From Bispira polyomma (lineage: Eukaryota), in the NCBI GenBank assembly GCA_965649765.1, contig OZ287749.1, positions 5,828,001-5,892,000 on the forward strand: a stretch of 64,000 nt of DNA. Direction: 5' to 3'. Positions 1 through 63,538 of the stretch are shown piece by piece. The position numbers and the translations under genes were made by a program. The stretch's first letter is position 1. The number at the start of each line of letters is the position of its first letter. The notes under the pieces were generated by a model, which saw nothing but the letters and a program-made list of their open reading frames with translations, was not told where the DNA came from and searched no databases.

Positions 1-47
1 AGTAAATGGTGAGAACTTCTCCATCCTCACTCAATTCAAACAGCAAG
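1..47 (-). CDS. Gene A internal exon, truncated by window edge
   Basis: Acceptor tgtttatag|; LLFELSEDGEVLTIY resembles the F-x-F-x(4-5)-G-x-V strand-turn-strand of LLTP N-sheets; phase 2 start. Confidence 0.55.
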
Positions 48-23367: not shown

Positions 23368-23538
23368 CTTTGCTGATGTGAGTATGGTCCCTGCATCTTT
23401 GATCAAAGTGCTCGCCTCAAGACTGTACCAATATTCAAACCCTGGGGTGAAACCCAGTGCTGTAACAACCGGAAACTGGTGGTTGACAACCAGGAATGAC
23501 AGTGTAGTTAGCCACCAGCAACTAGTAGCAGTCAGCAT
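23368..23538 (-). CDS. Gene A coding exon 1: signal peptide + start of putative lipid-transport (vitellogenin-N/LPD_N-like) domain
   Basis: ATG in agg-ATG context; MLTATSCWWLTTLSFLVVNHQFPVVTALGFTPGFEYWYSLEASTLIKDAGTILTSAK; hydrophobic N-terminus, then F-x-PG-x-EY-x-Y motif like that opening LLTP domains; donor AAG|gtgggt, phase 0. Confidence 0.75.
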
Positions 23539-23697
23539 CCTTTTGTCTTGTCTGTTTTGTTTTATTGCTTCTACATTGAAATATCCTTTATATAATTGTT
23601 CACTTTGTAAGTTAAATCTCTGAATACAGTATACTTATATATCAGTATTTTAAGATAGGTTTCACCAATTTCAGTAATAACAATAAGTGCACCTATA

Positions 23698-23748
<51 letters not shown>

Positions 23749-24856
23749 TATGCGAGTCTAGGTTGTACATAAAAACCAGAAATGGCTAATATATTCAGTG
23801 TAAAACATGAAAACTTGATAGAATATCAAATATATCCTGTACGATGAGATCCATTGTACATACATATATGCACAAAACAAATATTATTTATGCATATTTC
23901 TTTTTCCCCAACAATCGAATCCTTTTCTCCGAAAACAAGACTTTTTGTGTTATTTAGTGATAGATTTTTATGTCACTCATTTATTAAGAACCTTAAGAAC
24001 TGAAGCATAACCAAATAGTTAACGCCTATGTATCAACAGAAAAGTAACTTCAGCATGTTTTTGGAAACAATCACCCATAAATAGAATACATTCGTCTAAT
24101 TCTCTTCCTTGTTTGTCATAGTGTAGATTTGTGTCTGTGCACAGTTTAAAAGAAATGCAAAGTTTTCTTGATCTAGTCATGATTTACTGATAAGAGGTAG
24201 AATATTTCTAATATGTATACAAACTTTACTACGTTCTGAAGGATGTGTTTTTGGTCACCAAAAAAAAAAAAGATTCATAAAAATTGACACACACTTTATT
24301 TCCGGGAAATTCAAGTGGGGAAATATCTAGTTTCAGTCTTCAAGGTGGTGTATGTGTTTTGCATAATATAGGATAAGGCAGTTGGTTAAAAAGATTCCAT
24401 AAAATTAACTTTGTGAATATATATATATATATATATATGGATAGTGTTGGATGTTCAGGTTCGATCATATGGATCATTAGAAAATGTTACATGTTGGAAT
24501 TTAACAATATGATAAAATATATGTCTAGATTGACTGAGCTGAATTTCATATAAAGAAAAAGCTGTTTAAGCTTTTTAAGCTATTGTTTGTAATAATAGTT
24601 AACTTTGTTGTGCCGAACATAAGATGCTCTTAAACTTTAGGCATGCAGGATGTTTAACGTTTGGATAGAATCGTAGAAGTCACCAAATCTTTGAAAGTTT
24701 AATCTTTACCCATTAGTGTCTGTTTCCATGTGTGCGGTTTGCGATTATCGATATCGTTCCGTTGGAAATAAAATATACCAAATACGGTATTTTATTCCAA
24801 AGCCTGTAACATACTTATTTCTTGTCAGATTTAAAAATCCATTTCTTCATTCTTGT

Positions 24857-25149
24857 ATGGCCTAATGGTCAGGGAGTTGCTTTGGTGATCAGAATGCCCC
24901 TGGTTTGACTCCTGGTAAGGGACTTGGTCTGGTGATCAGAAGGTCCCTGGTTTGACTCCTGGTAAAGGAGTTAGTCTGGTGATCAGAAGGTCCCTGGTTT
25001 GACTCCTGGTAAGGGAGTTGGTCTGGTGATCAGAAGGTCTCTGGTTTGACTCCTGGTAAGGAAGTTGATCTGGTGATCAGAAGGTCCCTGGTTGGACTTC
25101 TGGTTAGGGAGTTGGTCTGATGATCAGAAGGTCCCTAGTTTGACTCCTG
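24857..25149 (+). repeat. 47-bp tandem array x6 derived from a tRNA/SINE head
   Basis: One A-box-like TGGCCTAATGG, then units with GATCAGA at 24887, 24934, 24981, 25028, 25075, 25122, each with B-box-like GGTTTGACTCC or a close variant. Confidence 0.85.
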
Positions 25150-25605
25150 TTTAATGGGTGGGATAACAATATGTCATTGCCTCATGATGATGACCCAGGC
25201 TACATAGTAGACCACATGAATGGTTTATCAATTCAGTTGTTGCACTTTAGAAGATGCGTCACATTAATAAAGCATGTTAAAAATATATACAATAGAATAC
25301 AAAATATGTAGTCTGCGGCATTTGATATTCGGCTACAATAAATTTCGTAGACATCTGTAGGAGCTTTTTTGTTGTATGCGTGGTACGGTATACGAAACCC
25401 CTTTAAACTGGATGTGTTTGAGCAGCTATATAAGACATACATGTGGATGCCAGATGACATCCGACAGCATATATGGAAACTTCGCTTTATTTATGCAAAC
25501 TGTAATCTGTTTTTTTGATCAGGTATTCTAAAATAGTAAGCCGTACGCGTGGAAACACACAGTTGATCTTTTACGTATCATTCACATGACCTACGGTAGG
25601 ACACA

Positions 25606-25673
25606 ATGCTGCTGATATCTATTCTGGGCGTGCTCCTCTTACCTCACTTGGACATGGCTCTGACTCCTGGTGG
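25606..25673 (+). CDS. Gene B exon 1: signal peptide
   Basis: MLLISILGVLLLPHLDMALTPG; donor GG|gtgagt, phase 2 matches exon 2; possible upstream acceptor at 25522. Confidence 0.75.
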
Positions 25674-26357
25674 GTGAGTAAACTTCATTTATAATTAATA
25701 TGTATTTTTAGATATAAACATTTTTTTCTTTTAGGTTTTAAAGCCGTAACTGATTACATACGGAAGATATTTTAATAATACATTTTGCAAAAGTATCTCT
25801 GGCCAACCTCATTAGTTAGGGATCGCTTAAGATTCTAGTACAATCACTAAGCTAGTTATCACTATCAAAAAGCTTAGCCCACCTGACACGGTCTTACCAT
25901 CACCGATTCCCTCTCTGGTAACAACAGTTTTTCTGTTTCCCACAATACAAATACTGAATAATGATTTTTGGTTGTTGCGCCTTGGAATCCGCTAGTACAG
26001 AGATTAAGCATGATTAATTGATCGGATTAGATTGTTTTCAGTAAAAGATATAGTTTGACCATTCACGATTGTTGGTGTATATGTCATTAGTACTGGTGTA
26101 CGTACAAGTTTACTGGGCGAGGTTTGCTATATAAATCATCTGTACTGGTATACGTACTGCATATGTATGTAAACACATCCCCCCAAAATATCAAATGAGC
26201 CACAATTTGACTGTGTATGCGTGGTCCGTGCTGACGTCACATTTGTGTACATCTGAACAGAACTTTAGACAAAGTCTGTCGGGTATATGTGACAAACACA
26301 ATGGCTCTTCCTGGCCGTTGCATTTTTCAGAGAGGAAATCTGTCTAATTCCTCCGTC

Positions 26358-26720
26358 TTACTCTTCAACTGACCTGTGATTGCTTCCATTTCCGGTTTTC
26401 GATATTTGCTCAATATGTTCCTTCTCCATTGTGCGGAGTTCTGTCTGAAGATAATTACTTTCTCTATTAAGGACATGGAAGGTATGCACATCTATCACAA
26501 GAACAATGCCATTGTATCTTTGCATATTGCAATATTTGAATACTTCGTTTTCCATATCCTGTTGATGGAAGTCCTTTACTTCACAAAGAAAGTAGCGGAA
26601 TTTCAAGTCATCCTTTTCTAAATATTCACAGAAAGCTGCCATTACTTCCTCTTTCAGTTTATCCCAATTAACTGACACCTGTTCCATTTTAAACTTGAAC
26701 CTTGAAGTATGTTTACTCAT
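26358..26720 (-). pseudogene. Antisense intronic ORF or decayed gene fragment, unknown alpha/beta protein
   Basis: About 120 codons from MSKHTSRF with protein-like composition (...YNGIVLVIDVHTFHVLNRE...); a second frame continues to GRAIVFVTY past a stop. Confidence 0.4.
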
Positions 26721-27849
26721 TCTATGAAGAGATTTTTCAGCAAGGCAACTGTGATAACACACATACCCACTTAAGCCAAGGGTATTGATATCTTGTAAAA
26801 GAGTCAAAAATGACCTCAGTTAGACGTGGTTTATTTCTCCGTAACTTAGTTAAGGCTTTGAACGACTCAAATCACCGAGTCATGTGCAATCCTCACAAAG
26901 TTACATGTTAGTCTTTAGTAACAGCAAATCGTGCAAACATATCACAAGTAACCTGTTAACGTTATCACACAGTTGTGACTTAGCTTCTGTTGAACTCAAC
27001 AGTACACCTCGTTATGTTAACGAGCTACTGTTAACTGATATGACATGATCATTGTTTGTGCTTATATTATTGGTAAAATAATATTTGCAATCATTTACAA
27101 GGCGGGTGTCGATTAGTACCCCGGTGTGAACTTGTCTGCTACCACTAAAAGTTACCCAAGCTGCATTATTTCCCTGTAATCAATCACCACCAGTGTCACC
27201 AAAGATAATCACAGTGCTTTAGTTTGGAACAAATATGACGAATAAAAAATAATCTTTCATATTTACTTTATAAGTTCATTGTGTAACATTGTCCCATGGG
27301 CGTTAATGGAAACATTGCTACAGAGAAAAGGTATATCACTACTAAAATTCATATACATCAACCCTAATAACAAGTATAAGGGGGCCAGTAAAATACGGTA
27401 CATATTTCACATGCTATAAATGAGGCCATTATGATGTATTTTGACGTCACAATGACACGCCGTGAAAAAGTAATCCACGTATTGACTTTGCTGTGTGCCT
27501 ATATAACCCCGACGCGCCCGGTCAGGAAGGCTCGTGCTACGTCTTCCAATCACATATATAAAGCAAAACGTAACTGCAATAGATATGTTCCTGGGGTAAG
27601 TCAGACATCAAAGAAGTAGAGGTTTCGTTTTACGTTGGTCCACACAGCTAAAATGACGCACAAATAGACACAGAGAAGATGATTGGCCTTGGCTTGCGTG
27701 TTTAAACAGGCCTGTCGTATCTCGAATACACAGAATTATAAACTAAAACTAAGCAAGATGACGCCATGTATATATTACCTTTGAGTAGATCACTTACGTA
27801 CTGATTCCTGAAGCAAGGTAGAAAAAAAGACCACGAACTAAAAACAACA

Positions 27850-29050
27850 CACGAAATTACATAGCAAAAAAATATTAAGGTTCTTCAAACGAACTCTGGA
27901 CAAATCATTTCAGAACAACCTAAGAGACTCCATTTTGTGGAACAGCATTACCAGAAGCTTTTTAAAAACGAAAACAATGTCACAGAAAATGTTAATCTTA
28001 AAAAAAATATTAAAAGACAATACAATAGGTAAAATTAATGAAAAGAATTTAGGGAACCAAACAGCTTTAGAAGAGTTGAGCCTTGTTTTAAAAAAGACGA
28101 AACATAATATGTCCCCCGGAGTGGATGGCATGACTGCTGATTTTTGAAAGTTTTCTTTGAAAGGATAAACCTTTTTTACTTCATGCTATAAATACATGTT
28201 TCAAAAAATATATTTTGGCTTTAAGTTTTGATATATTGGTGTGAGCTATGTGAAATTCAAACTGCAAATTCAAAATCAGAATTACTGCAATCTTGTATCT
28301 GGTATAATTCATATATCTCAGTAGCACCTTTATATTTTCCCACTTGGGAGATATTGTAAATCCAGATGGTGAAATCATATCATGTTACAGTATAAAAAAA
28401 CATACATATAGTGTAAATATAAATATATTACACTATTCTCAAATAAGATCTTTATTAAACACTTGTTTATCTAAATTTAAGAAAGAATCAGAAAATGTAT
28501 TTATAAGACCAAACTATCTGTTTCATATTATCCCTTTGTTAAAGTGTACTAGAGGATGTAAAGGATTTTACCATATTCTTCAAACTGCCAAAAAGCCAGC
28601 CTTTATCACACTGAGCTAATTAAAGTGGGGAAACCTGTTACCTCAAAATAACACAGATCTTTTTTGAAAGAATATTTGTCAAGCATGTTTTAAGTCTGTG
28701 CTAGATAACTCTGTGTTAAGTATACAATATAAAATATTGTTTAATATTTTACCACAAGAGAATATCTTTTCAAAGTAAAATTAGTAACAATAGTTTTTAT
28801 AGGTTTTGTGAATGCATTAAAGTTTAAGTTTTTGGGATAATATACATCAATGGATGTTAAATAACTTTTGGCCTTTAAATTTTATGTTAGCAAGAAGATA
28901 TATTTACTGGTGTTTTAAAAGAGGTTATGACCAAAATACATATTTATTTTCAGAAGCAAAGTTACAACATATTTGTCACAAATCAATTGAATGGAACGTC
29001 GCCTCGGAAAGACCTTCTAAAAAGTTAAAATTTTTAATATTAAAAATGGC
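27850..29050 (+). mobile_element. Degenerate, internally deleted L1/Tx1-clade LINE ORF2 remnant
   Basis: LKKTKHNMSPGVDGMTADF matches the K-S-P-G-x-D-G-x-T-A-E-F pre-RT motif; downstream fragments LGDIVNPDGEI and FMLARRYIY resemble Tx1-like C-terminal region; multiple stops and frameshifts. Confidence 0.7.
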
Positions 29051-32000
29051 CTTTAGTATATTTTACATTAAAAGTAATTCATATATTGTATGGTATATCT
29101 ATCTTGTGTTTCACTTGATATGCTGACAAAGATATAGACCGAGTTTTCTGTCCTCGACAATGCTTTGAGTTTTGGTAGCCGTATTGGAGTGGCGTGTCAA
29201 TACTTATTTTTCACTCATTTGCATCTCCAATACTTATGTATCTGCATTCGAGTGGCACTCAACGGTCAAGAAATAAGTACTGAACTAATTCATATATATC
29301 GGCTGATAACTTCAGTAACTAACCCACGTGACATTATCTATTCCTTAATTAAGGTTAAATATTTAGGTTAAGATATATAGTAGGGAGTGAAAATAGTTTG
29401 TGAATGTGCGCAGGTGGGCGGCGCCTTAATACACATTGGAAAACAACGCCAGTAGAATAGCCCTATGTACGCATGGTATTTGATTAATCAAATAATTGTA
29501 CGCAATATTGTAACTTATGGGCAAAGTAAAAGTACTAGATTAATTATATGTCATTATTTGGAAAAAACATTTTATCCATTTAGAAAGCAATCTGAACTGT
29601 TTTGGATGCAAAGTCTGCAGCGAAATGAGTGATGCAAGCACTTTAGGTTTTTACAGATTGTTTTTAAATGGATAAAAATGTTACTAACGGCTTCCTTTCA
29701 ACATATTTCCCTCAGATGAGATCAGACTTAGGCCAATGTCTGTTCCCTCATCATAGTTTATCGTTCAGGGAGCGACAAAATCGCGAGGGTCTGTCCGATT
29801 TTCAAACAAAAATGAAGGCAAAAAAATTTATATCAAATATTTATTACATATCGGATGAACGGAAGTGCTACATCGGCTGATGTCAGATCGGCTCGGATGT
29901 TAATAAATTGGTCGACGTCGGAATCTGCTGAAAGTAAACCCAGGTTAAGCTGTCCACCCTTGCAGAGTAAAAATTCCTGGTTACAGAGTATTTAAGGTAG
30001 AAACGAAAACAAAAAATGGATAGGGTCGAAACTAAAATTCATAAAAATAGTAAACAATTATAACTTTATTATTCACAGCTATTCTAGGGTATTGACTTCT
30101 TAATAATTTCAAATGCATTCCCAAAGCTTATTCACCAAGATAAATCTTCAGAAGCTATTTTTTTAAAGGGCCTTTCTGTAATGTTCGGCCATCTTGGATT
30201 TAACAGGAAATCACCTAGTTCTATATTTTTCAAGATATCTAAAAAAACAATAGTTCAGACCTATTTTCATTTATACTGAAATGTCAGGCTAGGATTGGTG
30301 TTTAATTTAATATATGATTTGTAGGGCCAGCTATTCACCGGACTTCAGTATAGCTGAAAAGGCTATAAGATATTATATAACAAAATTAATAGTGGTCTGA
30401 CTCCATGAAATAACACAAAATCAGCCACTATATCATGTTTAAATAATGAGGGTATATATTTATCCCCAATCGGCTATCCATCAGTTTAAAAAGCCATTGG
30501 CGGCAGAATACTTGGTCTAATCAACACGCATCACTAAACCTGTCACCCAAAATCATTAGTAAACAGCTCAAAACTGTGAAGATCGTAACATTGTTTAAAA
30601 CTGTCGCTATACTTTTGTTCGGTTGATTGGCATTTTTATTGTTTTACTGGATTACCAGTATATGATATTTGTGAATATCAATATTATATTTCTTTCAACT
30701 GACAGTGACAAAACTAAACCTTCGCCTTAATAGGCGCATTTAACATAAGCATTTTTAACGCTGTACAACGTCATATGCGAGACTTTTTACACCTTTTCCC
30801 ATCAATCCGCACTCATGAAAAGATAAAACCACGTAGAAATTTGGAATTCCCCTATGACCATAACGTCCACAGACAGGTGATCTCAATATTACGTGGTAAA
30901 CAGGTAAAAACTGTGACATTAGTGTATTGTTTAAAAGAGCTGTCATGAACATCTTTGTGGGGGGTATTTGTATACTTTTGTATAATTAAGTTGTTGCATT
31001 ATGTAGTCAACATATAGTATCACATATTATTAATATTATTTACAACATTTTTACCCCTCATACTAAGGACGTCTTAAAAAGCGAACCCTTCACGTTAAAT
31101 ATGCATTTCTTACGTTTACTAAAAGTTGGAAGTGAAACGGTGCGGTTGGAAGGGTGCGGTAGAGGTGCGGAATTTGCAGATACACTGCATCTGAAAAACT
31201 GGTAGTTTTTTTCTAGTACTGTTTAATTAATAAAAACTTCCCCAACCTCATTTTGAAAATTCAGCTCCCGATTTGGAGGTGCTGTCGGCCAGGTGTATTT
31301 TACTTCTCAATTTTATTATATTTTTTCGGATGACGGAAACAGACATCGGATAGCGGATTCGGACACAAAATTCGCCCCTTAAGTTAATTCTCAGTCTTAA
31401 ATCTAGCACAAAAGTATACTAGATTCAAACCTAAGATTTGTTGAAGTCTATTAGTGAATATAGGCCTAGATCTAAAAGAGGTATTTTAGTGTAAAACAAC
31501 AAAAAATTTGAATTGGTAGGAGAAACAAATGTAATACATGTATTCAGAGAATAGAAGTTTGAGTGTACACAATTTTTTGGCATATAATACACATTTTTAG
31601 GTGCAAGTTACACTTGGTCCATATTTTGAATATGGTCTATAAAAACACACACTTGTGTATTCATATTACAGATGATCTCAAACTTTTGTTGCACTTAATC
31701 TTTTCATTCAAAAAAAAGTACATCGGCAAATTTGTGCAATTGGAAAATGAAAAATTCTATTTAAAACATAGTACTAATTCAAAACCTACCAATACATGTA
31801 TATACAAGATCATTAACAGATAATTATCCCTGTAGATAAATTGTTAAGGTGGTGTTTCTTATGTTTTACATACCTAAATTTATTCAGAGATTAATATGAA
31901 TTGAAAAAACATTTAAATATTTTTACAGGACCATAATTATATAGATTATTATGTGTGTGTCATTTCATTTGTGTGTAATGTTGATGTACAATGTAGTAGT

Positions 32001-35160: not shown

Positions 35161-35202
35161 AATTGTGTTGTGTGTTTTAGATTTAATTGTTGTGTGTTTT
35201 AG

Positions 35203-35292
35203 AGTTAATGTTTGTTCCTACCAAGCAACAAGACGAGACAGATATACAACCAGCTGCGGGTTTTGGGGAAGAAGGAGGTGTACACGATACAG
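35203..35292 (+). CDS. Gene B exon 2: EMI-like Cys module, first half
   Basis: tgtgttttag|; VNVCSYQATRRDRYTTSCGFWGRRRCTRYR; AG|gtatat; phase 2-2. Confidence 0.8.
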
Positions 35293-36303
35293 GTATATAG
35301 GTCAAGCGCGGTCGCGGGGGGGGGGGGGGAGGGGAATCAAAGACTTTGATGCAATGTAAATATAACAGAAGAGATTTCTTTAAAAATAGAAATACTTTAC
35401 TGTTAAAATGGATAGTCTTAAAAAGTGCGTTTTTAAATTTTTGGGGGATTTTTTTTAAGTAACTTCTTTTCCAACACATTTTGATTAAGTGACACTTTTA
35501 TTCAACAAATAAAAAGTTTATTTGTAGAGGTGGCCAAGGCGGTGTAGTGGTAACATAGTGAGTAATTATTATCTAAAAGAGAGTTATCTTAAAAGTTCAT
35601 GCAATTTATATGAAGACATGGTTAATTGTAATGTCAAGGACAACATAATTGGTGATATTAATTGGTGATGAAAGTTGATGTTATTTAAATATAAAGCTGA
35701 AACATCTCTAAATTTAGTAGGATCTTAAAGGGGTCATCTCAAGAGTTCATGAAATCTATAGATAAATTAAGGTTATGTCAAGTTGATAACAGCTATCTGT
35801 GAAACAGGGTTGTTTCAAAAGTTATTCTCATCTATTATGTAAAGGTAGTTGATGTTATCAACATATAAGGGGAACACCTCAAATGTTACAATGGTCTATA
35901 AAGGTAAAGGGGGTCATGTCACAAGTTTTGTCAATTTATAGTTAAACAGGGTTGTCTCAAAAGTTGATGTGATCTACAGGTAGAAATGCTGTTAAAAAGT
36001 TGATCTATAGATAAGTCAGTCATCTGAAAAGACAATGTGATTTATCAATTAATGTATCTGTTCATTTAAACTTTAATTTACATTGTGTCAGGTGATGATA
36101 TTGTTGATGAGGTCATTTAACAATATACTTCCAATTTTTATATTATTTTAAAAGTACTCATTTTAATACTTAGGGATATAATAACATGTAAGTTTATTTT
36201 CTTCTTGAAAATATTTTTGAAATATAAAATGATGTCTGATAGTGAGCTGTTTCAATAGAACTATGATTAAAACTTTTAGGACTGGTTATTACACCAACTA
36301 CAG

Positions 36304-36356
36304 ATGTTGTCAAGATTGGAGCGAAGCCTACTCAGGAGCAACCACATGTACTGTGC
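36304..36356 (+). CDS. Gene B exon 3: EMI-like module end (CC-x-x-W...C)
   Basis: ctacag|; CCQDWSEAYSGATTCTV; |gtaagt; phase 2-1. Confidence 0.85.
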
Positions 36357-38069: not shown

Positions 38070-38171
38070 CTTGGTGTATAGGTGGTTGGGACACTTGCCC
38101 CAATGGAGGAACCTGCACAACCGCTAACTACTGTGCTTGTCCAAGAGGTTACTTCTCGCCAAATTGTGTTC
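38070..38171 (+). CDS. Gene B exon 4: EGF-like domain
   Basis: cacag|; WCIGGWDTCPNGGTCTTANYCACPRGYFSPNCV, six-Cys EGF spacing; |gtaagt; phase 1-1. Confidence 0.92.
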
Positions 38172-38735: not shown

Positions 38736-38882
38736 AATGTACACAAATAGCCAACTGTGCCATACACGAGTGCACATCCTCTTCTGATCAACGCTGTGTG
38801 ACGTGCAATTATGAATACGACCATATTATACGTGCTTATCAACCAGTGGATTCTGGGGGCTATCCAGAAAGAGTGTGTCAGC
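38736..38882 (+). CDS. Gene B exon 5: Cys-rich module
   Basis: ttttcag|; CTQIANCAIHECTSSSDQRCVTCNYEYDHIIRAYQPVDSGGYPERVCQ; |gtaaga; phase 1-1. Confidence 0.9.
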
Positions 38883-44649: not shown

Positions 44650-44780
44650 TCACTACCACACCAGATATCGCTTCATGCTTGGCCACTATAACAGACAGTG
44701 ATGATGAGGTAGCTGAAGTCAACTGTGAAGACGTAAACAGGGTAACAAAGTATACCAACATCATGGCCAGCAAACTAAAA
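44650..44780 (+). CDS. Gene B exon 7
   Basis: tttttccag|; TTTPDIASCLATITDSDDEVAEVNCEDVNRVTKYTNIMASKLK; |gtgaga; phase 1-0. Confidence 0.85.
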
Positions 44781-45984
44781 GTGAGATTGCTCTTATATCA
44801 AGTTTCTGTATGACTTTTCCTGTTAATAACCTTTCCCTTGTTTTAGATTTAGCACCTTAAGTGGGTGTTCCACTTTGGTTTTTTGGTGCCCGACATTCCT
44901 AATTTGAGGTCTAGGGCATGTCCGTATAGGTCCAGGGGAAAAAACGGGGTGGTCGCGGTGGTCGGGAAGAATATCAATTATGTTTGATTTTTTCTAAAAG
45001 TACCCTGACTTACCTACCCGACCTCTAAAAACAGGAAGGTCAGCATTCCCCAAATAAGTTCGATCTTATTGTCAACAAGTTTTGTCTGATAGGTCTTATC
45101 TCACGCAAGGCCTGTCCTAACACTGGCTCGTTAGAACTTATAGGTTGGGGGTGAAAACAACGCAAACAAGGATGGTCTAGAAGGATATAAGATCATTTTG
45201 TCAGTCATTTTGCCATAACAGTCCCGACTTTGAGTTTTAGACATTCGATCCTGATGGTCAGGAATATGGATCTATCACATCATATTGGTGATATGTTCGA
45301 TCCTAGGGCAATACGTCAGATCCTATCACCAGTAAGTTCGATCCTAATCAGGGTAGGGGATGTTGAGGCGGTTAAATACAGATTTTAAGTTGATTGTGGT
45401 CGGTGTCCCATCAAAACGGGACGTAATCAGTTCGATCTCAAAATACCCACTTTAGAGGATGTATATAATCTAAATCTGGTACTTTAGAAATCCTTAAAAT
45501 ATTACATAATTCCATCAAAATGGGACGTAATCAGTTCGATCTCAAAATACCCACTTTAGAGGATGTATATAATCTAAATCTGGTACCTTAGAAATCCTTA
45601 AAATATTACATAGTTCCATTAATATAGTTTGTTGAAAGGGAAGTGGGGGGGGTGAGTTTCGACGATTTGTTTCATACACAGATAAAATTTACAAACAATT
45701 ACGGAAAAGTTTTAACCTATTATTTAAATCTCTACAATTACTAAAGATAATGGAACAGTTTCATGTTTTTGGCTTCATTATTTAAACTTATATCCAATAT
45801 TAGATATTTTAAAATATTTGTTCAGTACTTTTGAACTTTTATACATTTTGATCAAACTACGACTAGTTGGCACTTAAAATTGATTTGCAGCAGCAAATAA
45901 TTTAGTTCCCTACAAACCAGACAGTGATTAGAATATCTATATATTTTTGCTGGATAATAATGCTTAAAGTTTTTGAATACATAG

Positions 45985-46117
45985 GTTGACTGGGTCACAC
46001 AATATCAGGGACCAGCAGGGACAGGAGCAGGTGGATCCACATTTCCCTATCACTATTATGTCCAAGACTATGATGTGGGGGTGGTGTCTGCCACGGTGGA
46101 CTGGACCATATCGAGGG
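45985..46117 (+). CDS. Gene B exon 8
   Basis: catag|; VDWVTQYQGPAGTGAGGSTFPYHYYVQDYDVGVVSATVDWTISR; |gtatgg; phase 0-1; absent from the ORF track. Confidence 0.85.
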
Positions 46118-47965: not shown

Positions 47966-48439
47966 GTATGTATATCACTGTTAGTCTGGTATTCACAAAG
48001 ATTTTTATTCTTTAATCTTTTTTGTTGAAACAAATTTGATTTGCTGAAATTTTATTTCAAAGAACGCGATTGACTGGGACAAAGACAATTGTAAGAATTG
48101 TATTTTAAATAATATGATTGGCTGGGATTAAGAAAATTCTAAGAATTTTATTTCAAGAATGTGGGTGAATATAGCACATTGGTACTTATTGTCTACATCA
48201 GCTAAGCTTTAAACTAAAATATTATATGCAAGTTATGGCTATGTGAAAGGCTTTTGTGTATGGAAAACCCTAAACTTGTCACCATGCATGTTTACCTAAG
48301 ATAAGAAGATTTTGCTGAGAAATAAATGTCATGTAATTTTACTTACTTCCATCGAGGCTTTTACAAATGCCTTCATTATTAGTTTGTTTTCTTAAAAAAA
48401 TAAAGCCAAAATTTATATGCATATTGGATTTGTTTACAG

Positions 48440-48653
48440 GTTGCATTTTTCTCCTAAGTCTACAAATGGCGGCAGACTACAGATCAAGAACCATGACAGT
48501 TCTGCCACTAACCCCACTATAGAGGATCAGTACTACTCGGGTAGCACTCTGACCCACACTGCTAGTTTTACATTTGACTTTGACCCTCCTTACCACTGCC
48601 TCGGCTCCTGTTCCACCAGTATGCTAGAGAGAGGGGATGCTTTTACCAAACAG
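48440..48653 (+). CDS. Gene B exon 10
   Basis: tttacag|; LHFSPKSTNGGRLQIKNH...FTFDFDPPYHCLGSCSTSMLERGDAFTKQ; |gtacta; phase 2-0. Confidence 0.88.
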
Positions 48654-49123
48654 GTACTAAACATTACACATTTTATATATAGCATTAATAAGGAGTGGTA
48701 TATGAAAAATCTTAATATCAGTCAAATAGATGAGGTAAAACATGATGAAAATGATGTAACTTTTCCCCAAATTGTGGTTTCATGTGGTTTAGTGATTCAA
48801 CCTTTTCGATCCTTAGGTTGTTAGTTATCTTAATGTGGCACTTCTTACCTATGTTTGTCAGTAAGCAGTTGACCCAATTACCCAAAATGGGACAACGTAG
48901 AGGTCAAAAGGTTTAACCCTAACTATGTAATCCAAGGATGTTATTCCAAAATGACCAGCATATAATAGTAAGTTGAACAAGGGAACCTCCAGAAATGAGA
49001 CCAAATCCTATTACCACCTTTTCCACCAAGGTTACATAGAGTCCATGTCTAAACAAAATAATTAATAAAATGTATAGTATATACTGTTAAACATACGACT
49101 ACAGATGTCTTCAATCCATTTAG

Positions 49124-49322
49124 ACAACCTTCAGTGTGAGCTGGGAAGGCTGGACAGATGCTATTGCGGGTGTGAAGATGTACCAGTATGAAGTCTACAA
49201 GTTTAAACATCTGGGAACCGGAGTCAGCGCCATGTTAGACTATAAAACAGAAACACCAGTTGTGTCTGAAAAAGTGAACAGCCTACCCTCTCCAGTCCCC
49301 AGTCTAACCCTGGCTGAACCAG
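49124..49322 (+). CDS. Gene B exon 11: FN3/Ig-like repeat
   Basis: catttag|; TTFSVSWEGWTDAIAGVKMYQYEVY... (W-x-G-W/F-x-D-x-x-S/A-G-I/V-x-x-Y motif); CAG|gtaaat; phase 0-1. Confidence 0.9.
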
Positions 49323-49526
49323 GTAAATGAAATCATTTCTATGATTACAAATTTTGATATGTCAATATTATAATGTCTCCTGTGTTAAACCCACCAACAG
49401 AGCTTTCTATATCACTGCTCTCATGATATGAAATAGTCTCCCAGTTGAGCTTAGATCACCATAGAAACACTTTTGTTAAGGTTGGAAGAAAAACTTAAAA
49501 CCTATCTCTTCCACTGACTTACCATC

Positions 49527-49845
49527 TTTGCTGACCTAATTTACTGTATCTTTAGGCATGTCCTGTATCCTACTCATTGTCTATAATGACACAAGTGATG
49601 ATGTTCTTTGCTGATCTTGTTTACTTTTCTTTAGGTATGTCCTGTATCCTACTCATTGTCTATAATGACACAAGTGACGATGTTTTTGCTGACCTTGTTT
49701 ACTTTTTCTTTAGGTATGTCCTGTATCCTACTCATCGTCTATGATGACACAAGTGATGATGTGCTTTGCTGATCTTGTTTACTTTTCTTTAGGTATGTAC
49801 TGTGTCCTACTCATTGTCTATGATGACACAAGTGATAATGTTCTT
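49527..49845 (+). repeat. 79-bp tandem repeat x4 spanning the exon 12 acceptor
   Basis: Acceptor AGs end at 49555, 49634, 49713, 49792. Confidence 0.93.
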
Positions 49846-49992
49846 CATTCCAACCACAGACTGGCCAGGCGCTTTAAACTTTTTGATGATTCTAGTCTAG
49901 TAGAGACCAGTGACCATATTGACCATCAGATGTTTGTAAACTCTGCAGCAGCCAATACGTCTTATGAGTGGATTACAACCCTAGATGAAGAG
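49793..49992 (+). CDS. Gene B exon 12
   Basis: Last of four repeated acceptors; MYCVLLIVYDDTSDNVLHSNHRLARRFKLFDDSS...WITTLDEE; |gtaaat; phase 1-0. Confidence 0.88.
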
Positions 49993-50984
49993 GTAAATAT
50001 AAAAGTGACTTCCTGTGTCAAGAATATATCAATAATTCTGAATGAAAAACAAAAACAAATATAAAAAGAACTGACAATTCGTAATAATTTAGGTGCTGTA
50101 TTTCCCATTTTTAGCCTTAACTTAGTCTTTATGCTTTAGATTTTAGTCATTGATTTTGTTCAAATATTTTGTTTATAGTTCCAGTAAGAGTACGCAAAGA
50201 TCTTCGCTTAGTGTTAACTTTGCTCTTAACACTAAAGAAGTAACAGTAGGCAGTCCTAAATACTTCAGACATAAATGTTAAGCCTAAGACTCAGACTATT
50301 TGCTAAAACAGCTTAAGTAGGACATAAAGTGTGGAAGTTTTTTCACCACCCTAACATGATCCTCTTAAATATGTACACATATTTTAAAACAAATAAACAT
50401 TTTGACAGTGTATACATTCCATGAAGGGTAAATTATGTGCTTACATGTAAGTATATGGTTGTTGTCCATTCTTTGAAGTATACATTCTTAAAGAAATCTT
50501 TCTTTTTGTCACTACTAATGTGACAGCACAACCTCTATTGTCTGACCATGTTGGGAGATTTAAGATTTTATCCTGATGTGCAGTACAGCAAGTACTCTTC
50601 GTGAAACAATAAAACAATAAAGGTAAAATTATTTGACTTATTCCAACAATCTTTCATGTTTTCCATAAACCAGACAACCATGTATTTTATTATATAATTG
50701 TAAAACATCAAAATAAAATACAAAATATGGAGTTTTATAAACCTTAGTAAGTTATGTCTTGGGTGTGGTAAATTTTGTCCTGGTACGTTTTGTCCGGGTA
50801 CATTTTGTCGCGGTATGTTTACCCAGGAAAACCAGTGGCCCCCCTTTGGTAAAATCTGCTAGATCTGCCACTGACTGTTGGTTCAGAAATTAAATATTAG
50901 GATATATGTTACTATATAGTTAAAAAACGTGTTCCTTATGTTTTACAAGCCCCTGTAAATAGCTCATATATTGTGTTTATTCAG

Positions 50985-51157
50985 GTTGCAGTTCAATGGA
51001 CTGACCATTTCTACAATGACTTCCATAGGACAAACTTCCTACTGAACGCTATAGCCCCACACTCGACAGAAATAGATGCAGACTATGAAGAGAGAACGGG
51101 ACAACCCCACGGGTTTAGATCAATGGAAGCAATCCCTAATGTGAACGGCATTGTCAG
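50985..51157 (+). CDS. Gene B exon 13
   Basis: tattcag|; VAVQWTDHFYNDFHRTNFLLNAI...AIPNVNGIV; AG|gtatgg; phase 0-2. Confidence 0.9.
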
Positions 51158-53247: not shown

Positions 53248-53456
53248 AATGAAACAGAATCCAGAGTAATCTCTCGAATTGATGGGGATTCCATCAAGTT
53301 TTGGGTGAAAGCCTTCGATGTCCTGAATAACACATTGATTGATGAAGTCTTGGTTCATGTAGACTCTACTGCACCTCATATTGAGAATGTGGGGCTTGTG
53401 AGGGATGGTGAAAAACTATTAGTGGTGCACAGTACTGTGGATCTGTTTGATATGGC
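53248..53456 (+). CDS. Gene B exon 15
   Basis: aacatag|; NETESRVISRIDGDSIKFWVKAFDVLNNTLIDEVLVHVDSTAPHIENVGLVRDGEKLLVVHSTVDLFDM; |gtaagt; phase 0-2. Confidence 0.9.
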
Positions 53457-53730
53457 GTAAGTTTTATAGAGTGGTGTTTTATAGAGATTATATGACATTG
53501 TTTCTTACTGATTACTACTAGCTTTACGCAAAAAAGCTTATATTAATTTCTATTGTCAGAATATTTGATTTTATAAATGACATAGTCATAACTCCGTCTT
53601 ATGCTGAAGATTTTGGTCTTTGACTTCGGCCGAAAAGGTTAAGATTTTTGCTTCAATCTTAGTGACAGCAGTGTTTTAACTTTATGCTCAAACTAACAGT
53701 GGGCAGTCTTTAAATATTTTAAACATCAAT

Positions 53731-53920
53731 GTTAAGACTAAGTTAAGACCAAGTTAAGACCAAGTTAAGACTAAGTTAAGACTAAGTTAAGACCAAATTA
53801 AGACCAAGTTAAGACTAAGTTAAGACCAAGTTAAGACTAAGTTAAGACTAAGTTAAACTGAATTAAGACTAAGGTAAGACCAAGTTAAGACCAAGTTAAG
53901 ACTAAGGTAAAACTTAAGAC
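53731..53920. repeat. 11-bp tandem repeat (AAGTTAAGAC[C/T]) inside a common MITE-like family
   Basis: About 17 units followed by CTTTTGTGAA end motif also seen near 3550, 20090 and 22070. Confidence 0.85.
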
Positions 53921-53945
53921 CTTTTGTGAACACATCTATTTACAG

Positions 53946-54063
53946 GCTTGAGTTTGAAACTTATGACCATCACTCTGGAATGAAACAGATCAGCTGGGAA
54001 TTATTTGACATGGCAGACCTTACAGTGCATGGACAGGGGGCTGTGGCTGTAGTGAGGACTAAT
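53946..54063 (+). CDS. Gene B exon 16
   Basis: tttacag|; LEFETYDHHSGMKQISWELFDMADLTVHGQGAVAVVRTN; |gtaagt; phase 2-0. Confidence 0.9.
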
Positions 54064-60238: not shown

Positions 60239-60430
60239 GCTGCAGATCCTACCTGTGTAGCCCCAGACTTTTACCTTATTGAGAAAGACGAGGAATGCTT
60301 TAAGACAACGTATCAGATAGCTCCTGAACAAGACAAACTGGACATTGCATCTGGAATACACGATGGTGATTATGTCTATGTAATTACTGTAGTGAACAAC
60401 GCCATGCTGCAAACTGTTTACAGATTTCAG
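60239..60430 (+). CDS. Gene B exon 17
   Basis: tattttcag|; AADPTCVAPDFYLIEKDEECFKTTYQ...VITVVNNAMLQTVYRFQ; |gtaagg; phase 0-0. Confidence 0.9.
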
Positions 60431-60859
60431 GTAAGGTTGATTTTTTACTATGTTCCATAGAAGTTTTCCCTTTGGATTTAGAGTCTTTGTGTAATGGATT
60501 ATGGATACTATTTTTGACATAAAGAATCTTTTTTAAGCTAAATCATTTTAACAGTCACAAAAATATTAAATAGAAATATTTTGGTAATTTTTGATATATG
60601 GAATCTTTTTCCAAGCTTAATCATTTTAACAATCATGGAAATTTTAAAAAGAAATATTTAATAAAAACGAAAAAAATAGCTGGTCATTCAGATTATATTT
60701 ATATTCTATTACTGAAGTCTTATTGATGCCGGACACCTTCTAAAGTGCAACATTAAAATCGATAATCGAATAACAATTAGTCATCAGTAGTAGACAAGTA
60801 TGTATTGACATTTCACCAAAGAATGTCATCTGCCAATGACCATTAATGGTGTTACCATG

Positions 60860-61256
60860 ACTACCAAATCAACTCCCCAACTGGGAGTCAAACCAAGAAC
60901 CTTCTGATCATTAGACCAACTCAGTAGTTTAACCAGGCACCGTCTGATTGCCAGATGTACCTCCCCAACTGGGAGTCAATCCTTTGGATCTTCTGATTAC
61001 CAGACTGACTCCCCAAATAACAATCAAACCAGGGAATTTCTGAACACCAGACCAACTCCCTTAGTGGCAGTTAAATCTTTGAATCTTCTGATCACCAAAC
61101 CAACTCCTCAACTGGATAATGAGCCTGGGACCTTTTCTTCACCAGACCAACTCCCTGAGTGGGAGTCTAAGCAACACATTCTGATGACTAGACCAACTTT
61201 GCAGTCGATAGTCAAACCAGCGATCTTCTGATCACCAGACCAACTCACACTAGGCA
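60860..61256 (-). repeat. Degenerate inverted relative of the 47-bp tRNA-head array
   Basis: Repeated GGGAGTCAAACC...CTTCTGATCACCAGACCAACTC. Confidence 0.75.
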
Positions 61257-61475
61257 ATGCAAGATCACAAGAGTTCATGAAGAACCAGCAAAAAAGTACA
61301 TTTCACAGCATGGCTTAGTGATAGATGTGTTTAGAAATCATCTGTGAAGGAACATAAAATAATCAGTTGATTTAATGGTACAAATATGATATCACAATTC
61401 CCACTTTAACTTTTAAACTTGGTGTTTCAGGCATCTGCCCTAATAACTGTTTGACATTATGTGTATTTTTTACAG

Positions 61476-61688
61476 ATCACCATAGATGTCTCTCCCCCAC
61501 TACCAGGCCATGTATTTGATGCTATACTAGGAAACAAAGACCTTGACTACCAATCTAGTCCACTTGTTCATGCATCTTGGCATGGCTTCTTTGATAGAGA
61601 AAGTGGCATCAAAATGTACAAATATGCTATTCATACAGCTTGTTTGGCAAAGACAGACTTTGAATTTGGAAGTTCCCCACTTGCTGAG
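61476..61688 (+). CDS. Gene B exon 18: FN3-like repeat
   Basis: tttttacag|; ITIDVSPPLPGHVFDAILGNKDLDYQSSPLVHASWHGFFDRESGIKMYKYAI...; |gtatgc; phase 0-0. Confidence 0.92.
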
Positions 61689-62969
61689 GTATGCTGTTTA
61701 TCTGATAAAATTTATAATTTTCCATTTTCCGTCTCTCAACAGCCTTCCTACCTTGTTACTCATCTTCTGTTCCAATCTCTGGTATACCCACCAAGAGGAC
61801 TGGATGTAGGGCTTGCTTAATCGCTGCCCCTATGTTATAGAATAGTCTCCCAGTTGTACTTAGATCACTGAAAATACTTTATGGGTTTATGATAAAACTA
61901 TCTCTTGTAACTCACTTACTTTAAGTTCCATCCTTTGTACACCCCTATATCCTTTGTTATGACTTGACTATGTTTTGTTTTTATTGACTTGTCTGTTGAT
62001 TAATTGATTATGTTGTTGTGCTTTAGAAGATGCCTCTTAGAGTCGGGTAGTTGGTCTAAGTCTTTGGTGGTGTAAACCACCAACCTTCTCCAAGTCTACT
62101 GCCAACCTTTCCAATAAATCATGTTAAAAATGTCATATGCAATACAAAAGAATATTTATACACAGTATTGACCAGTGTTCTGGGATTGAAGATGCTAGTA
62201 TACATTTATTCGAATGCACAAGTACAGTTATCCTGCATCAGACTAACTGCCCTTACTCTAACTGCAGACAGAGAATTGAGAGTAACACCATTTATCAATG
62301 TCATCAAGATTCTTTAGTCTACCATTGTCAATAATAGGACCCAGTGACAGTGGACAGCACCATTTTAAGTGGTCATTAGAGCCACTATGTAGCCACTGCC
62401 TGTACCTGTGAGGCCCATGCTAGGATCAGACCCAGGTCCTTTGTATTCATAGAGTGTGTCACAATGTTAAATTAAATTGTGGATAAGTGTTGTTTAAAGC
62501 ATTATTATTACATTGGGTTAAGGCCAAAATATACCTGTCATTAAATACCTGGGGAAGGGGTCTTACCATTTAAGGCCAATTATTGGAGGTTGTCTTAGTG
62601 CGTGATTTTAATTAAGCTTTTTTGCATTTCACAAGAAAGTGAAATTTTTGAACTGTAAAATCACCTACCTTATCTAATCATCCAAATACCTTGTAAATTG
62701 ATGAGTTTTATGTTACTTTTTAGTTAATAATCCTTGATATTTTGGGATATATTGAACTGTTATGTTTCCTATGTTATCCAAATATGATATTTATACAAAG
62801 TTAAAAGTGATGGCACATTCATAAGGAACAAGGCATTTAAAACCAACTATTCTATGTGCATTGATTTATCTAAGTAATAGTTAAAATACTATATATTTAC
62901 ACATACATGTGTTGAACACTGTTGAACCACTGGTGTTTTTGGATTAGGATCACTATTGCTACATGTACA

Positions 62970-63328
62970 TCACATTCAGTAACATATGGTGGCACATATT
63001 ACATCTTATGTTATCTTATTTTCCAGATAGCTACCACTTCTTACCCCTATGGCCCTAAATCAGTGACAGAGGGTGGTACATATTACATCTCATGTTACAT
63101 ACACTACTACGTACACTACATTCTGTTGTTGAATCTTCTTTTCCAGATAGCTACGACTTTTAACACCTTTGCCTCCCATTCAGTGACAGAGGGTGGCACA
63201 TATTACATCTCATGTTACATACACTACTACATACACTACATACTGTTGTTAAATCTTCTTTTCCAGATAGCTACCACTTTTAACACCTTTGCCTCCCAGT
63301 CAGTGACAGAGGGTGCTACATATTACAC
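62970..63328 (+). repeat. 120-bp tandem repeat x3 (plus degenerate partial) spanning the exon 19 acceptor
   Basis: TTTTCCAG|ATAGCTAC at 63027, 63147, 63267. Confidence 0.93.
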
Positions 63329-63538
63329 CACAGTTGTTGCCTACAACCACGCCTTAGAACCTTCACATCCTGTTTGTTCAGACGGTGTTACCATAGATAC
63401 AACTCCCCCGGAAGTTGGATCAATACATGTCAGTCATGCTTACAATAAGCCAGGATTAGTGAAAGATAGTGAGAAGATGATGTATAGAGATGAAGAAGGT
63501 TATATGTATGAGTTAGAAGTACAGACTGAGGATTGTAG
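63267..63538 (+). CDS. Gene B exon 19 (in-frame alternative acceptors at 63027 and 63147 possible)
   Basis: ttttccag|; IATTFNTFASQSVTEGATYYTTVVAYNHALEPSHPVCSDGVTIDTTPPEV...EDC; AG|gtaggt; phase 0-2. Confidence 0.88.

What the first reader, a model, noticed from the sequence alone, without database searches (positions are those of the whole stretch)
23368..25673. Head-to-head pair of large secreted-protein genes: LLTP/vitellogenin-N-like and EMI-EGF-FN3-like
Seen: two signal-peptide exons point away from each other, with ATGs at 23538 (minus) and 25606 (plus), about 2 kb apart, although introns here are commonly several kb. Established: tight divergent pairs often share a bidirectional promoter and can encode co-expressed subunits (e.g. 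collagen IV pairs). Inference: a co-regulated two-gene extracellular system, a lipid-binding-type protein plus a Cys-rich/FN3 partner, neither of which I can name. It could be a secreted complex in immunity or matrix formation. This is the best candidate for an undescribed system in the window.
Basis: partly seen in the sequence, partly recalled or inferred. Interest (0 to 1): 0.8.

Follow-up and report, generated by a model that had tools for sequence, protein, structure and literature searches.

The report
Conserved head-to-head giant secreted gene pair
Two very large secreted-protein genes, one lipid-transfer-protein-like and one built of EGF and fibronectin-III-like modules, start about 2 kb apart on opposite strands. 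The same pairing recurs six times on this chromosome and also in amphioxus, so it is probably an old, selectively kept gene pair whose function is unknown.

Summary
ATG 23538 (minus) and ATG 25606 (plus) each open a signal-peptide exon ending at a GT donor, 2,068 bp apart.

- **Gene B** chains in frame through 17 exons to the window's end. Its order is signal peptide, EMI-like Cys module, EGF, Cys-rich modules, then FN3-like repeats. It is collinear with uncharacterised 3,000-3,400 aa proteins of amphioxus, hemichordates, echinoderms and molluscs.
- **Gene A** runs off the window's start. Two downstream exons give weak, collinear Vitellogenin_N hits, and an M23/LECT2-like exon follows in every copy found.

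- This chromosome carries six A/B blocks, all head-to-head. A-type exons occur nowhere else.
- In amphioxus, B homologues have a divergent neighbour whose first exon matches A exon 1 and ends at the same place. One such neighbour is annotated as 5,363 aa with a weak Vitellogenin_N hit, Sushi and Lectin_C. ATG-to-ATG distances there are 0.54-5.3 kb.

No partner exon was found upstream of the homologues checked in abalone, limpet, starfish or an oyster paralogue.

Shared regulation is the likeliest reason for the linkage. A physical complex is untested. No RNA data were available. The scan's other note on this window treats B as about 960 aa, but the gene probably continues beyond the window.

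The parts
23368..23538 (-). Gene A exon 1: ATG, signal-peptide-like stretch, start of the LLTP-type N-terminal motif; ends in phase 0 at a GT donor
   Evidence: sequence; five further copies on the chromosome with the same exon end; matching first exon of the divergent neighbour of B homologues in amphioxus.
1..47 (-). Gene A internal exon, the part inside the window. The whole exon runs from window 47 to about 139 bases before the window start. Phase 2 in, phase 1 out.
   Evidence: acceptor and donor; 12 of 15 substitutions against the paralogue fall on codon position 3.
23588..23595 (-). TATA-like box 50-57 nt upstream of the A ATG (consensus resemblance only; not kept in paralogue par1)
23749..24429 (.). 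Intergenic block next to the A start, shared only by the three young copies (about 73% identity); not a dispersed repeat
24866..25149 (.). Six copies of a 47-bp satellite unit that is dispersed genome-wide; an insertion absent from the two paralogous spacers
25353..25393 (.). 40-nt block about 215-250 nt upstream of the B ATG, kept at 80-82% in both young paralogues; candidate promoter element (inference)
25427..25434 (+). TATA-like box 172 nt upstream of the B ATG (consensus resemblance only)
25606..25673 (+). Gene B exon 1: signal peptide, ends in phase 2 at GTGAGT
35203..35292 (+). Gene B exon 2: first half of the EMI-like Cys module. Acceptor phase fits exon 1; donor CAG|GTA kept in three copies.
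36280..36356 (+). Gene B exon 3: second half of the EMI-like module with the C-C-x-D-W motif; donor GTAAGT kept in three copies
38070..38171 (+). Gene B exon 4: EGF-like module
   Evidence: EGF_2 23.9 bits against a cut-off of 22.1; starfish homologue has its signal peptide directly followed by this module..
38736..38882 (+). Gene B exon 5: Cys-rich module, 54% identical to amphioxus P0067/P0152
42718..42831 (+). Gene B exon 6: EGF-like Cys-rich module, 64-67% identical to amphioxus
44650..46117 (+). Gene B exons 7 (44650-44780) and 8 (45985-46117); weaker homology, boundaries less sure
48406..51157 (+). Gene B exons 9-12 (48406-48734 with an uncertain start, 49124-49322, 49793-49992, 50985-51157): first repeat modules
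53265..54063 (+). Gene B exons 13-14 (53265-53456, 53946-54063)
60239..63538 (+). Gene B exons 15-17 (60239-60430, 61476-61688, 63267-63538): FN3-like tandem beta-sandwich modules. The gene continues beyond the window.
   Evidence: fold of the homologous amphioxus segment.

Best explanation
This is a genuine, evolutionarily old head-to-head gene pair.

Gene A (minus strand) encodes a giant secreted protein. It starts with a very divergent LLTP (Vitellogenin_N-type) module and continues, outside the window, with amphipathic-helix exons and M23/LECT2-like and SAP-like exons.

Gene B (plus strand) encodes a giant secreted protein. Its order is signal peptide, EMI-like Cys module, EGF and Cys-rich modules, then many FN3-like beta-sandwich repeats. 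Its family runs to 3,000-3,400 aa.

The two genes have been copied together as one block at least six times on this chromosome. A pair of the same kind also sits head-to-head in amphioxus. The most likely reason they stay together is shared cis-regulatory DNA in and around the short spacer, giving coordinated expression.

Shown: both genes' 5' structure, their family relations, and the recurrence and conservation of the arrangement. Inferred: shared regulation. Speculative: that the two products act together outside the cell.
For: Gene structure:
- Exon anatomy and donors are as described.
- B forms an in-frame chain of 17 exons, mostly with consensus splice sites.
- B is collinear with amphioxus P0067/P0152 and P0029 at 40-67% identity. 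The starfish homologue's N-terminus is a signal peptide followed directly by the EGF module.

Family relations:
- B family: 766 representatives at E<=1e-3, all eukaryotic members unnamed.
- B domains: EGF_2 over the Pfam cut-off. The repeat segment folds as tandem beta-sandwiches at pLDDT 82. Its best PDB matches are FN3 tandems and SiiE BIg domains.
- A gives Vitellogenin_N hits on two separate exons in collinear order: positions 358-403 at E 0.043 and 479-522 at E 0.002. The second is also the only such hit in this region in the genome-wide scan.
- One A exon shows 12 of 15 substitutions at codon position 3.

Recurrence in this genome:
- Six A/B blocks lie on contig C2, all divergent. A exon 1 to B exon 5 distances are 10.7-26.5 kb.
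- An M23-like exon lies 11-21 kb downstream of the A Vitellogenin_N exon in all five copies where that exon was found.

Amphioxus:
- The divergent neighbour of P0153 is 5,363 aa with PF01347 (weak), Sushi and Lectin_C. Its ATG lies 4.4 kb from the B ATG.
- Its first exon matches A exon 1 at 57% identity, E 1.5e-7, with the same exon end.
- B. belcheri has two such exons upstream of P0152, the nearer one 543 bp from the B ATG. A profile that did not contain them detects them.
Against: - No transcript, TSS or expression data were available.
- The A exon or exons between 23368 and 47 were not found, so exon 1 is linked to the LLTP exons only by strand, order, phase logic and the amphioxus parallel.
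- Every Vitellogenin_N hit is below Pfam's cut-off for a single exon. The open beta-sheet and MTP lipid-binding domains were not found near A.
- The spacer is 2 kb, holds a dispersed satellite and two separate TATA-like boxes, and is not CpG-rich, so two independent promoters are possible.
- No A-like exon or divergent LLTP neighbour was found within 10 kb upstream of the B homologues checked. These were two Haliotis asinina loci, Patella, Acanthaster, a Saccostrea paralogue and two unionids.
- Block duplication alone keeps the arrangement in young copies.
- In one young block (par2) the A copy has lost the signal-peptide half of exon 1, and its Vitellogenin_N and M23 exons were not detected.
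- B-like N-terminal modules also occur at 10.6-11.9 Mb without A.
Confidence: 0.6

Rival explanations
1. The two genes are functionally unrelated neighbours with independent promoters. The linkage persists because enhancers of one gene lie inside or beside the other (a regulatory-block constraint) or simply because breakpoints are rare. It does not persist because the products work together or are co-expressed.
For: - Each ATG has its own TATA-like box.
- The spacer tolerates a satellite insertion and varies from 0.54 to 5.3 kb between copies and species.
- Irimia et al. 2012 (PMC3514665) describe both co-regulation and bystander-gene constraints as causes of conserved pairs.
Against: - The conserved orientation is 5'-5' with short spacers in both phyla. 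The same paper links that pattern to co-regulation.
- A-type genes are never found away from a B-type gene in this genome.
Confidence: 0.25
2. The recurrence is an artefact of history. One chance adjacency was multiplied by segmental duplication in this genome, and the amphioxus resemblance is a coincidental LLTP-type first exon near an unrelated FN3 gene.
For: - The three youngest blocks are 75-97% identical, introns included.
- The match to amphioxus covers only 28 residues of a motif common to LLTP N-termini.
- No pairing was seen at several other species' loci.
Against: - Older blocks still keep both genes, with A exon 1 at 42-62% and B exons at 49-75% amino-acid identity.
- Two different amphioxus B paralogues in different species each have the A-like exon on the opposite strand within 0.5-5.3 kb, with the same exon end.
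- The annotated neighbour carries PF01347 independently.
Confidence: 0.1
3. The window's copy is a decaying duplicate: one or both genes here are pseudogenes, and function resides in other blocks.
For: - Intron 1 of B has grown from about 1 kb in the paralogues to 9.5 kb here.
- An inverted pseudo-copy of B exons 5-6 carrying a stop lies in a B intron.
- An A exon was not found.
- The neighbouring par2 A copy is damaged.
Against: - All 17 B exons in the window are open and chain in frame.
- A exon 1, the A internal exon, the Vitellogenin_N exons and the M23 exon are open.
Confidence: 0.1

Closest known systems
Conserved ancestral microsyntenic pairs in 5'-5' orientation (Irimia et al. 2012, PMC3514665), for example HSPD1-HSPE1. 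The COL4A1-COL4A2 comparison rests on my own knowledge.
   Same: Two unrelated genes transcribed divergently from a short spacer. Adjacency and orientation are kept across phyla (a mollusc-like genome and cephalochordates). The pair is duplicated as a unit, as collagen IV pairs are.
   Different: - Both partners are uncharacterised giant secreted proteins with no homologue seen in vertebrates among the hits.
- The spacer here is 2 kb, not under 1 kb, and contains a satellite.
- No co-expression or shared promoter has been shown.
- I did not check whether this pair is in that paper's list.
Large lipid transfer proteins: vitellogenin, apolipophorin/apoB, MTP (Pfam Vitellogenin_N, PF01347)
   Same: Signal peptide followed by the F-x-P-G-x-x-Y-x-Y type start. 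Weak collinear hits to the helical part of Vitellogenin_N. An HEAT-like feature profile for the following exon (a lead only).
   Different: - Far more divergent than this genome's canonical LLTP genes on C3 and C6.
- No open beta-sheet or MTP lipid-binding domain detected.
- Followed by M23/LECT2-like and SAP-like exons. The amphioxus counterpart has Sushi and C-type lectin domains.
Uncharacterised 3,000-3,400 aa proteins: Branchiostoma LOC118405866 (XP_035661568.1) and LOC109483586 (XP_019642180.1), Acanthaster LOC110977889, Haliotis, Patella, Magallana 'EGF-like domain-containing protein'
   Same: Collinear with gene B exon by exon: same N-terminal order of signal peptide, Cys-rich/EGF modules and FN3-like repeats, at 40-67% identity.
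   Different: - None has a described function.
- N-terminal tips vary: EMI-like, TSP1 or SRCR.
- The window holds only about the first 920-970 residues.
EMI-domain matrix proteins (EMILINs, multimerins, MEGF family) and FN3/BIg repeat adhesins such as Salmonella SiiE
   Same: N-terminal Cys module with a C-C-x-[DG]-W type motif directly after the signal peptide. Long runs of roughly 105-residue beta-sandwich modules. The repeat's junction motif is shared with giant bacterial proteins from metagenomes.
   Different: Pfam EMI is not detected. No gC1q, collagen or kinase parts were seen. Resemblance to SiiE is at the fold level only, at 14% identity.

Membership tests
LLTP superfamily (Vitellogenin_N, PF01347), gene A | Match to the Pfam Vitellogenin_N profile | tested here: inconclusive
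   Two exons hit in collinear order: 12.8 bits (positions 358-403) and 17.2 bits (479-522). Each is below the 24-bit cut-off and each is the top or only hit. The amphioxus counterpart is flagged PF01347 'weak'. Exon 1 and the next known exon gave no Pfam hit.
LLTP superfamily, gene A | Signal peptide followed by the N-terminal beta-barrel start | tested here: inconclusive
   The motif is present and conserved in six copies and in amphioxus. It was recognised as LLTP-type only from my own knowledge of vitellogenin and apoB N-termini.
LLTP superfamily, gene A | Lipid-binding open beta-sheet domain (PF09172) or MTP lipid-binding domain (PF19444) | tested here: not met
   Genome-wide scans found these only in the canonical genes on C3 and C6, none near gene A. 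Exon-wise detection of a divergent domain is weak, so absence is not proven.
LLTP superfamily, gene A | Binds and transfers lipid | not testable with these tools
   Needs biochemistry.
EMI domain (PF07546), gene B exons 2-4 | Profile match, and a seven-Cys pattern with the CCxGW motif after the signal peptide | tested here: not met
   No EMI hit at E<=1 for the exons or for contiguous N-termini of P0037, P0189 and P0194. A seven-Cys pattern with C-C-x-D-W is visible and conserved in three copies. This is a resemblance only.
EGF-like domain, gene B exon 4 | Profile match over the curated cut-off | tested here: met
   EGF_2 at 23.9 bits against a cut-off of 22.1, E 5.5e-5.
Fibronectin type III / Ig-like beta-sandwich repeats, gene B | Beta-sandwich fold of about 100 residues in tandem | tested here: met
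   AlphaFold model of the homologous amphioxus segment has mean pLDDT 81.9. Foldseek top matches are FN3 tandems (LAR, PTP-delta, contactin, titin) and SiiE, at probability 1.00 and E 3e-5 to 1e-3. The model is of the homologue, not of the window's spliced product.
Fibronectin type III, gene B | Pfam fn3 sequence profile | tested here: inconclusive
   No fn3 hit on the window's exons. Homologues give fn3 hits mostly in their C-terminal parts.
Bidirectional-promoter gene pair | Divergent TSSs less than about 1 kb apart and co-expression | not testable with these tools
   ATG-to-ATG distance is 2,068 bp here, 1.6 kb and about 2.4 kb in the young paralogues, and 543 bp in B. belcheri. TSSs and expression are unknown.
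Conserved ancestral microsyntenic pair | Same two unrelated gene families adjacent, in the same orientation, in distant lineages | tested here: met
   This genome has six blocks. Branchiostoma has two paralogous loci across three assemblies. Not seen at the loci checked in gastropods, a starfish and an oyster paralogue.
Peptidase M23 / LECT2-like domain, downstream part of gene A | Profile match and the HxxxD and HxH metal motifs in order | tested here: inconclusive
   Pfam M23 at E 0.011, 16.4 bits against a cut-off of 28.7. PDB 6smk M23 domain at E 5.7e-4. H-x-x-x-D and H-x-H are seen in successive exons. Whether these exons belong to gene A rests on their constant linkage in five copies.

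The most novel reading that the evidence does not exclude
A and B are the two components of an ancient bilaterian extracellular system that vertebrates lost. A is an LLTP-derived carrier or recognition protein armed with M23/LECT2-like domains, or lectin and Sushi domains in amphioxus. B is a giant EGF/FN3 scaffold. They are made together from a shared divergent control region and bind each other outside the cell. The system is amplified as a unit where diversity is useful, for example in immunity or matrix and adhesive formation.
Probability: 0.15. Interest if true: 0.8.

Novelty: new member of a known kind. Interest (0 to 1): 0.6.

Why it matters
Gene order is mostly scrambled between phyla, so a divergent pair of unrelated genes kept between a mollusc-like genome and amphioxus is unusual. 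This pair has also been re-copied as a unit in both lineages. That makes it a strong hint of a shared control region or joint function.

Both partners are giant secreted proteins with no described function and no vertebrate counterpart among the hits. The linkage gives the first handle on them: it predicts co-expression, which public amphioxus RNA and chromatin data can test.

Gene A would also extend the LLTP superfamily to a new architecture, an LLTP N-terminus followed by M23/LECT2-like or lectin/Sushi modules.

Tried and rejected
- **Pfam, exon by exon.** Thirty A-side and about 20 B-side pieces gave mostly nothing.
- **PDB sequence searches.** One B exon matched cyanide dihydratase, which is noise. 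Two A exons gave nothing.
- **Local phmmer.** A exons against this genome's canonical LLTP exons gave no signal.
- **Word-indexed protein search.** A exon 1 and a 142-aa A ORF found nothing. The length filter excludes full-length relatives.
- **ESM Atlas.** One A exon gave only HEAT-like leads at 0.81.
- **Codon-usage exon finder.** The training set was too small, so I abandoned it.
- **Missing A exon(s).** A search by splice sites plus paralogue conservation found nothing convincing. The ORF at 3204-3437 was rejected because it has stops or frameshifts in the paralogues. A CC-x-G ORF at 37298 was rejected as B exon 3.
- **Neighbour look-ups with no divergent LLTP partner.** These covered B homologues in Sinanodonta, Potamilus, Haliotis (two loci), Patella, Acanthaster and Saccostrea. 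A weak Patella profile hit was noise. The Mizuhopecten and Glandiceps proteins were not on record.
- **Literature searches.** Nothing was found on either family or on the pair.
- The joined spliced proteins of A and B were never sent to any search or fold, because exons were searched apart. No complex prediction was run, because I do not claim binding.
Full report
**Setting**

The window is G000:C2:5828001-5892000 of a 1.04-Gb eukaryotic assembly with 35% G+C. Its closest protein relatives are in molluscs and other marine invertebrates. No transcript data were available. Gene structure therefore rests on sequence, paralogues and homologues. Spliced models were searched exon by exon only. The joined proteins were never sent to a tool.

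**The observation**

- On the minus strand, ATG 23538 opens a 57-codon exon that ends in phase 0 at 23368, followed by GT.
- On the plus strand, ATG 25606 opens a 68-nt exon that ends in phase 2 at 25673, followed by GTGAGT.
- Both begin with a hydrophobic, signal-peptide-like stretch, judged by eye.
- The ATGs are 2,068 bp apart.

**Gene B (plus strand)**

The 5' exons are conserved and chain in phase.
- Exon 1's ATG, frame (one 3-nt indel) and donor are kept in two paralogous copies, where the flanking DNA no longer aligns.
- Exon 2 (35203-35292) and exon 3 (36280-36356) were found by protein-level conservation with those copies and with amphioxus P0037. Their acceptors and donors are conserved, and their phases link exon 1 to exon 4 at 38070.
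- A phase-constrained chain runs without a break through 17 exons to 63538, about 2,750 coding nt, mostly with consensus splice sites. Exons 8 and 9 are the least sure.

The family is large and unnamed.
- A HMMER search with exon 16 found 766 representative proteins at E<=1e-3.
- Collinear tblastn shows that the window encodes roughly the first 920-970 residues of a protein like Branchiostoma XP_019642180.1/P0067, at 40-67% identity per exon.
- Relatives of 3,000-3,400 aa occur in amphioxus, hemichordates, echinoderms, gastropods, bivalves and an annelid. All are named 'uncharacterized' or given generic domain labels.
- The repeat's junction motif also occurs in giant proteins of bacterial metagenome bins.

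Domain assignments:
- Exon 4 passes Pfam EGF_2.
- EMI is not detected by Pfam, even in contiguous homologue N-termini. A seven-Cys pattern with C-C-x-D-W is nevertheless conserved.
- The amphioxus segment homologous to exons 15-17 folds at pLDDT 82 into tandem beta-sandwiches. Its best PDB matches are FN3 tandems and SiiE.

**Gene A (minus strand)**

Only exon 1 and 47 nt of a later exon lie inside the window.
- That later exon shows 12 of 15 substitutions against the paralogue at codon position 3.
- It enters in phase 2, whereas exon 1 leaves in phase 0. At least one exon between them therefore remains unfound.

Upstream of the window, on the same strand, there is a long series of coding-looking ORFs.
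- Two give Vitellogenin_N as top hit in collinear order: positions 358-403 at E 0.043 and 479-522 at E 0.002.
- The second also appears in the genome-wide scan at E 2.8, about 36 kb downstream of exon 1 on the right strand. By my own estimate, about three such chance hits in 2 Gb put the chance of one landing there near 1e-4.
- Canonical LLTP genes sit on C3 and C6. Their open beta-sheet and MTP domains are not found near A.
- Further downstream lie M23/LECT2-like exons (Pfam E 0.011, PDB 6smk E 5.7e-4) and a SAP-like exon.
- The M23 exon follows the Vitellogenin_N exon at 11-21 kb, on the same strand, in all five copies where that exon was found. It probably belongs to gene A.

**Recurrence in this genome**

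Four probes were searched genome-wide: A exon 1, the A Vitellogenin_N exon, B exon 5 and B exon 16. They define six blocks on C2. The table gives the A exon 1 and B exon 5 positions.

| Block | A exon 1 | B exon 5 | Distance |
|---|---|---|---|
| 1 | 5617567 (-) | 5628229 (+) | 10.7 kb |
| 2 (this window) | 5851538 (-) | 5866738 (+) | 15.2 kb |
| 3 (par2) | 5984754 (-) | 6011243 (+) | 26.5 kb |
| 4 (par1, inverted) | 6227435 (+) | 6204893 (-) | 22.5 kb |
| 5 | 6660887 (-) | 6685132 (+) | 24.2 kb |
| 6 | 13351539 (-) | 13365466 (+) | 13.9 kb |

- All six blocks are divergent. A-type exons were found nowhere else.
- Three blocks are young, at 75-97% identity with introns included. The others are older, with A exon 1 at 42-62% and B exons at 49-75% amino-acid identity.
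- In the older copies A exon 1 keeps the motif G-L-G-F-x-P-G-x-E-Y-W-Y and the same exon end.
- Counter-points: one young A copy (par2) has lost the signal-peptide half of exon 1. B-like N-terminal modules also occur at 10.6-11.9 Mb without A.

**Other species**

*Amphioxus: pairing present.*
- In the B. floridae x B. japonicum assembly, the B homologue P0153 has a divergent neighbour whose ATG lies 4.4 kb away. That neighbour is annotated as 5,363 aa with PF01347 (weak), Sushi and Lectin_C.
- The neighbour's first exon is a signal peptide followed by F-K-P-G-Y-x-Y-x-Y ... T-S-A-K, then GT. It matches A exon 1 at 57% over 28 residues (E 1.5e-7) and ends at the same position.
- The same exon lies unannotated 5.3 kb from P0037 in the B. 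floridae reference.
- B. belcheri has two such exons upstream of P0152, the nearer one 543 bp from the B ATG. A profile built without them finds them at E 7.8e-5 and 2.7e-3.

*Other loci: pairing not seen.*
- No A-like exon or LLTP neighbour was seen within 10 kb upstream of the B homologues examined. These were Haliotis (two loci, one model N-truncated), Patella, Acanthaster, a Saccostrea paralogue and two unionids.
- These may be paralogues and the probe is short, so the negatives are weak.

**The spacer**

- It contains a (TG)n run and six units of a 47-bp satellite that is dispersed genome-wide and absent from the paralogous spacers.
- It contains a 680-bp block found only in the three young copies.
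- It contains a 40-nt block upstream of B kept in all three young copies.
- It contains TATA-like boxes near each ATG.
- It is not CpG-enriched.
- These features allow either one shared control region or two separate promoters.

**Reading**

The pair is real and old. The best-supported cause of its persistence is shared cis-regulation. This fits the pattern that Irimia et al. 2012 describe for conserved 5'-5' pairs.

Rivals:
- A regulatory-block or bystander constraint without co-function.
- Historical accident multiplied by block duplication.
- Decay of this particular copy.

A secreted complex remains a speculation. I did not run a complex prediction because I do not claim binding.

**Verdict**

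Gene identities are largely right and the amphioxus microsynteny test is positive. EMI, a shared promoter, co-expression and a complex are unproven.
- This is a new member of a known kind: a conserved divergent gene pair, made of two uncharacterised giant gene families.

Noticed in passing
window 57815-59329 (minus-strand copies at 58057-58164 and 58969-59118): An inverted duplicate of B exons 5-6 and their flanks lies inside a B intron. The exon-5 copy carries a TAA.
   Followed up: partly
window 25606-36356 against par1 (C2:6197001-6267000) and par2 (C2:5964001-6004000): Divergence between the young blocks is mosaic. B exons 1-3 (signal peptide and EMI-like tip) are only about 72% nt or 46-49% aa identical with cysteines kept. 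A exon 1 and B exon 4 onward are 89-97% identical. This suggests either fast evolution of the tip or gene conversion elsewhere.
   Followed up: partly
window 25674-35202: B intron 1 is 9.5 kb here against about 1 kb in both young paralogues. It is swollen by repeats, including a reverse-transcriptase-like ORF at 27842-28144.
   Followed up: no
G000:C2:10632353-11884906: Seven or more copies of the B exon-5 Cys-rich module, five of them with identical scores, form an array with no A-type exon detected. This is a B-like subfamily or fragment array without the partner.
   Followed up: no
par2, L036:1501-1599 (G000:C2:5984647-5984754): The A copy in this block keeps only residues 22-57 of exon 1, because the signal-peptide half is replaced by unrelated AT-rich sequence. 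Its Vitellogenin_N and M23 exons were not detected, while the B partner's exon is 97% identical to the window's.
   Followed up: partly
L030:4502-4655 (B. floridae reference) against L040:5483-5635: The A-like first exon is in frame from its ATG in the hybrid assembly. In the B. floridae reference a small indel puts the ATG out of frame, and no gene is listed there. This is a likely annotation gap or polymorphism.
   Followed up: partly
window 56110-57525 and 59375-60203 (minus strand): Two near-identical reverse-transcriptase-like ORF sets (LINE-type fragments) lie in a B intron, flanking the inverted exon duplicate.
   Followed up: no
window 63539-64000 and beyond: Another note of this scan describes B as a roughly 960-aa, 19-20-exon protein ending in the window. 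Collinear homologues of 3,000-3,400 aa and a paralogue exon map indicate that the gene continues well past the window's end.
   Followed up: partly
window 31269-31369: A 100-nt piece inside B intron 1 matches the DNA just upstream of A exon 1 in both young paralogues (75-80%). It is a displaced fragment of the A promoter-proximal region.
   Followed up: no
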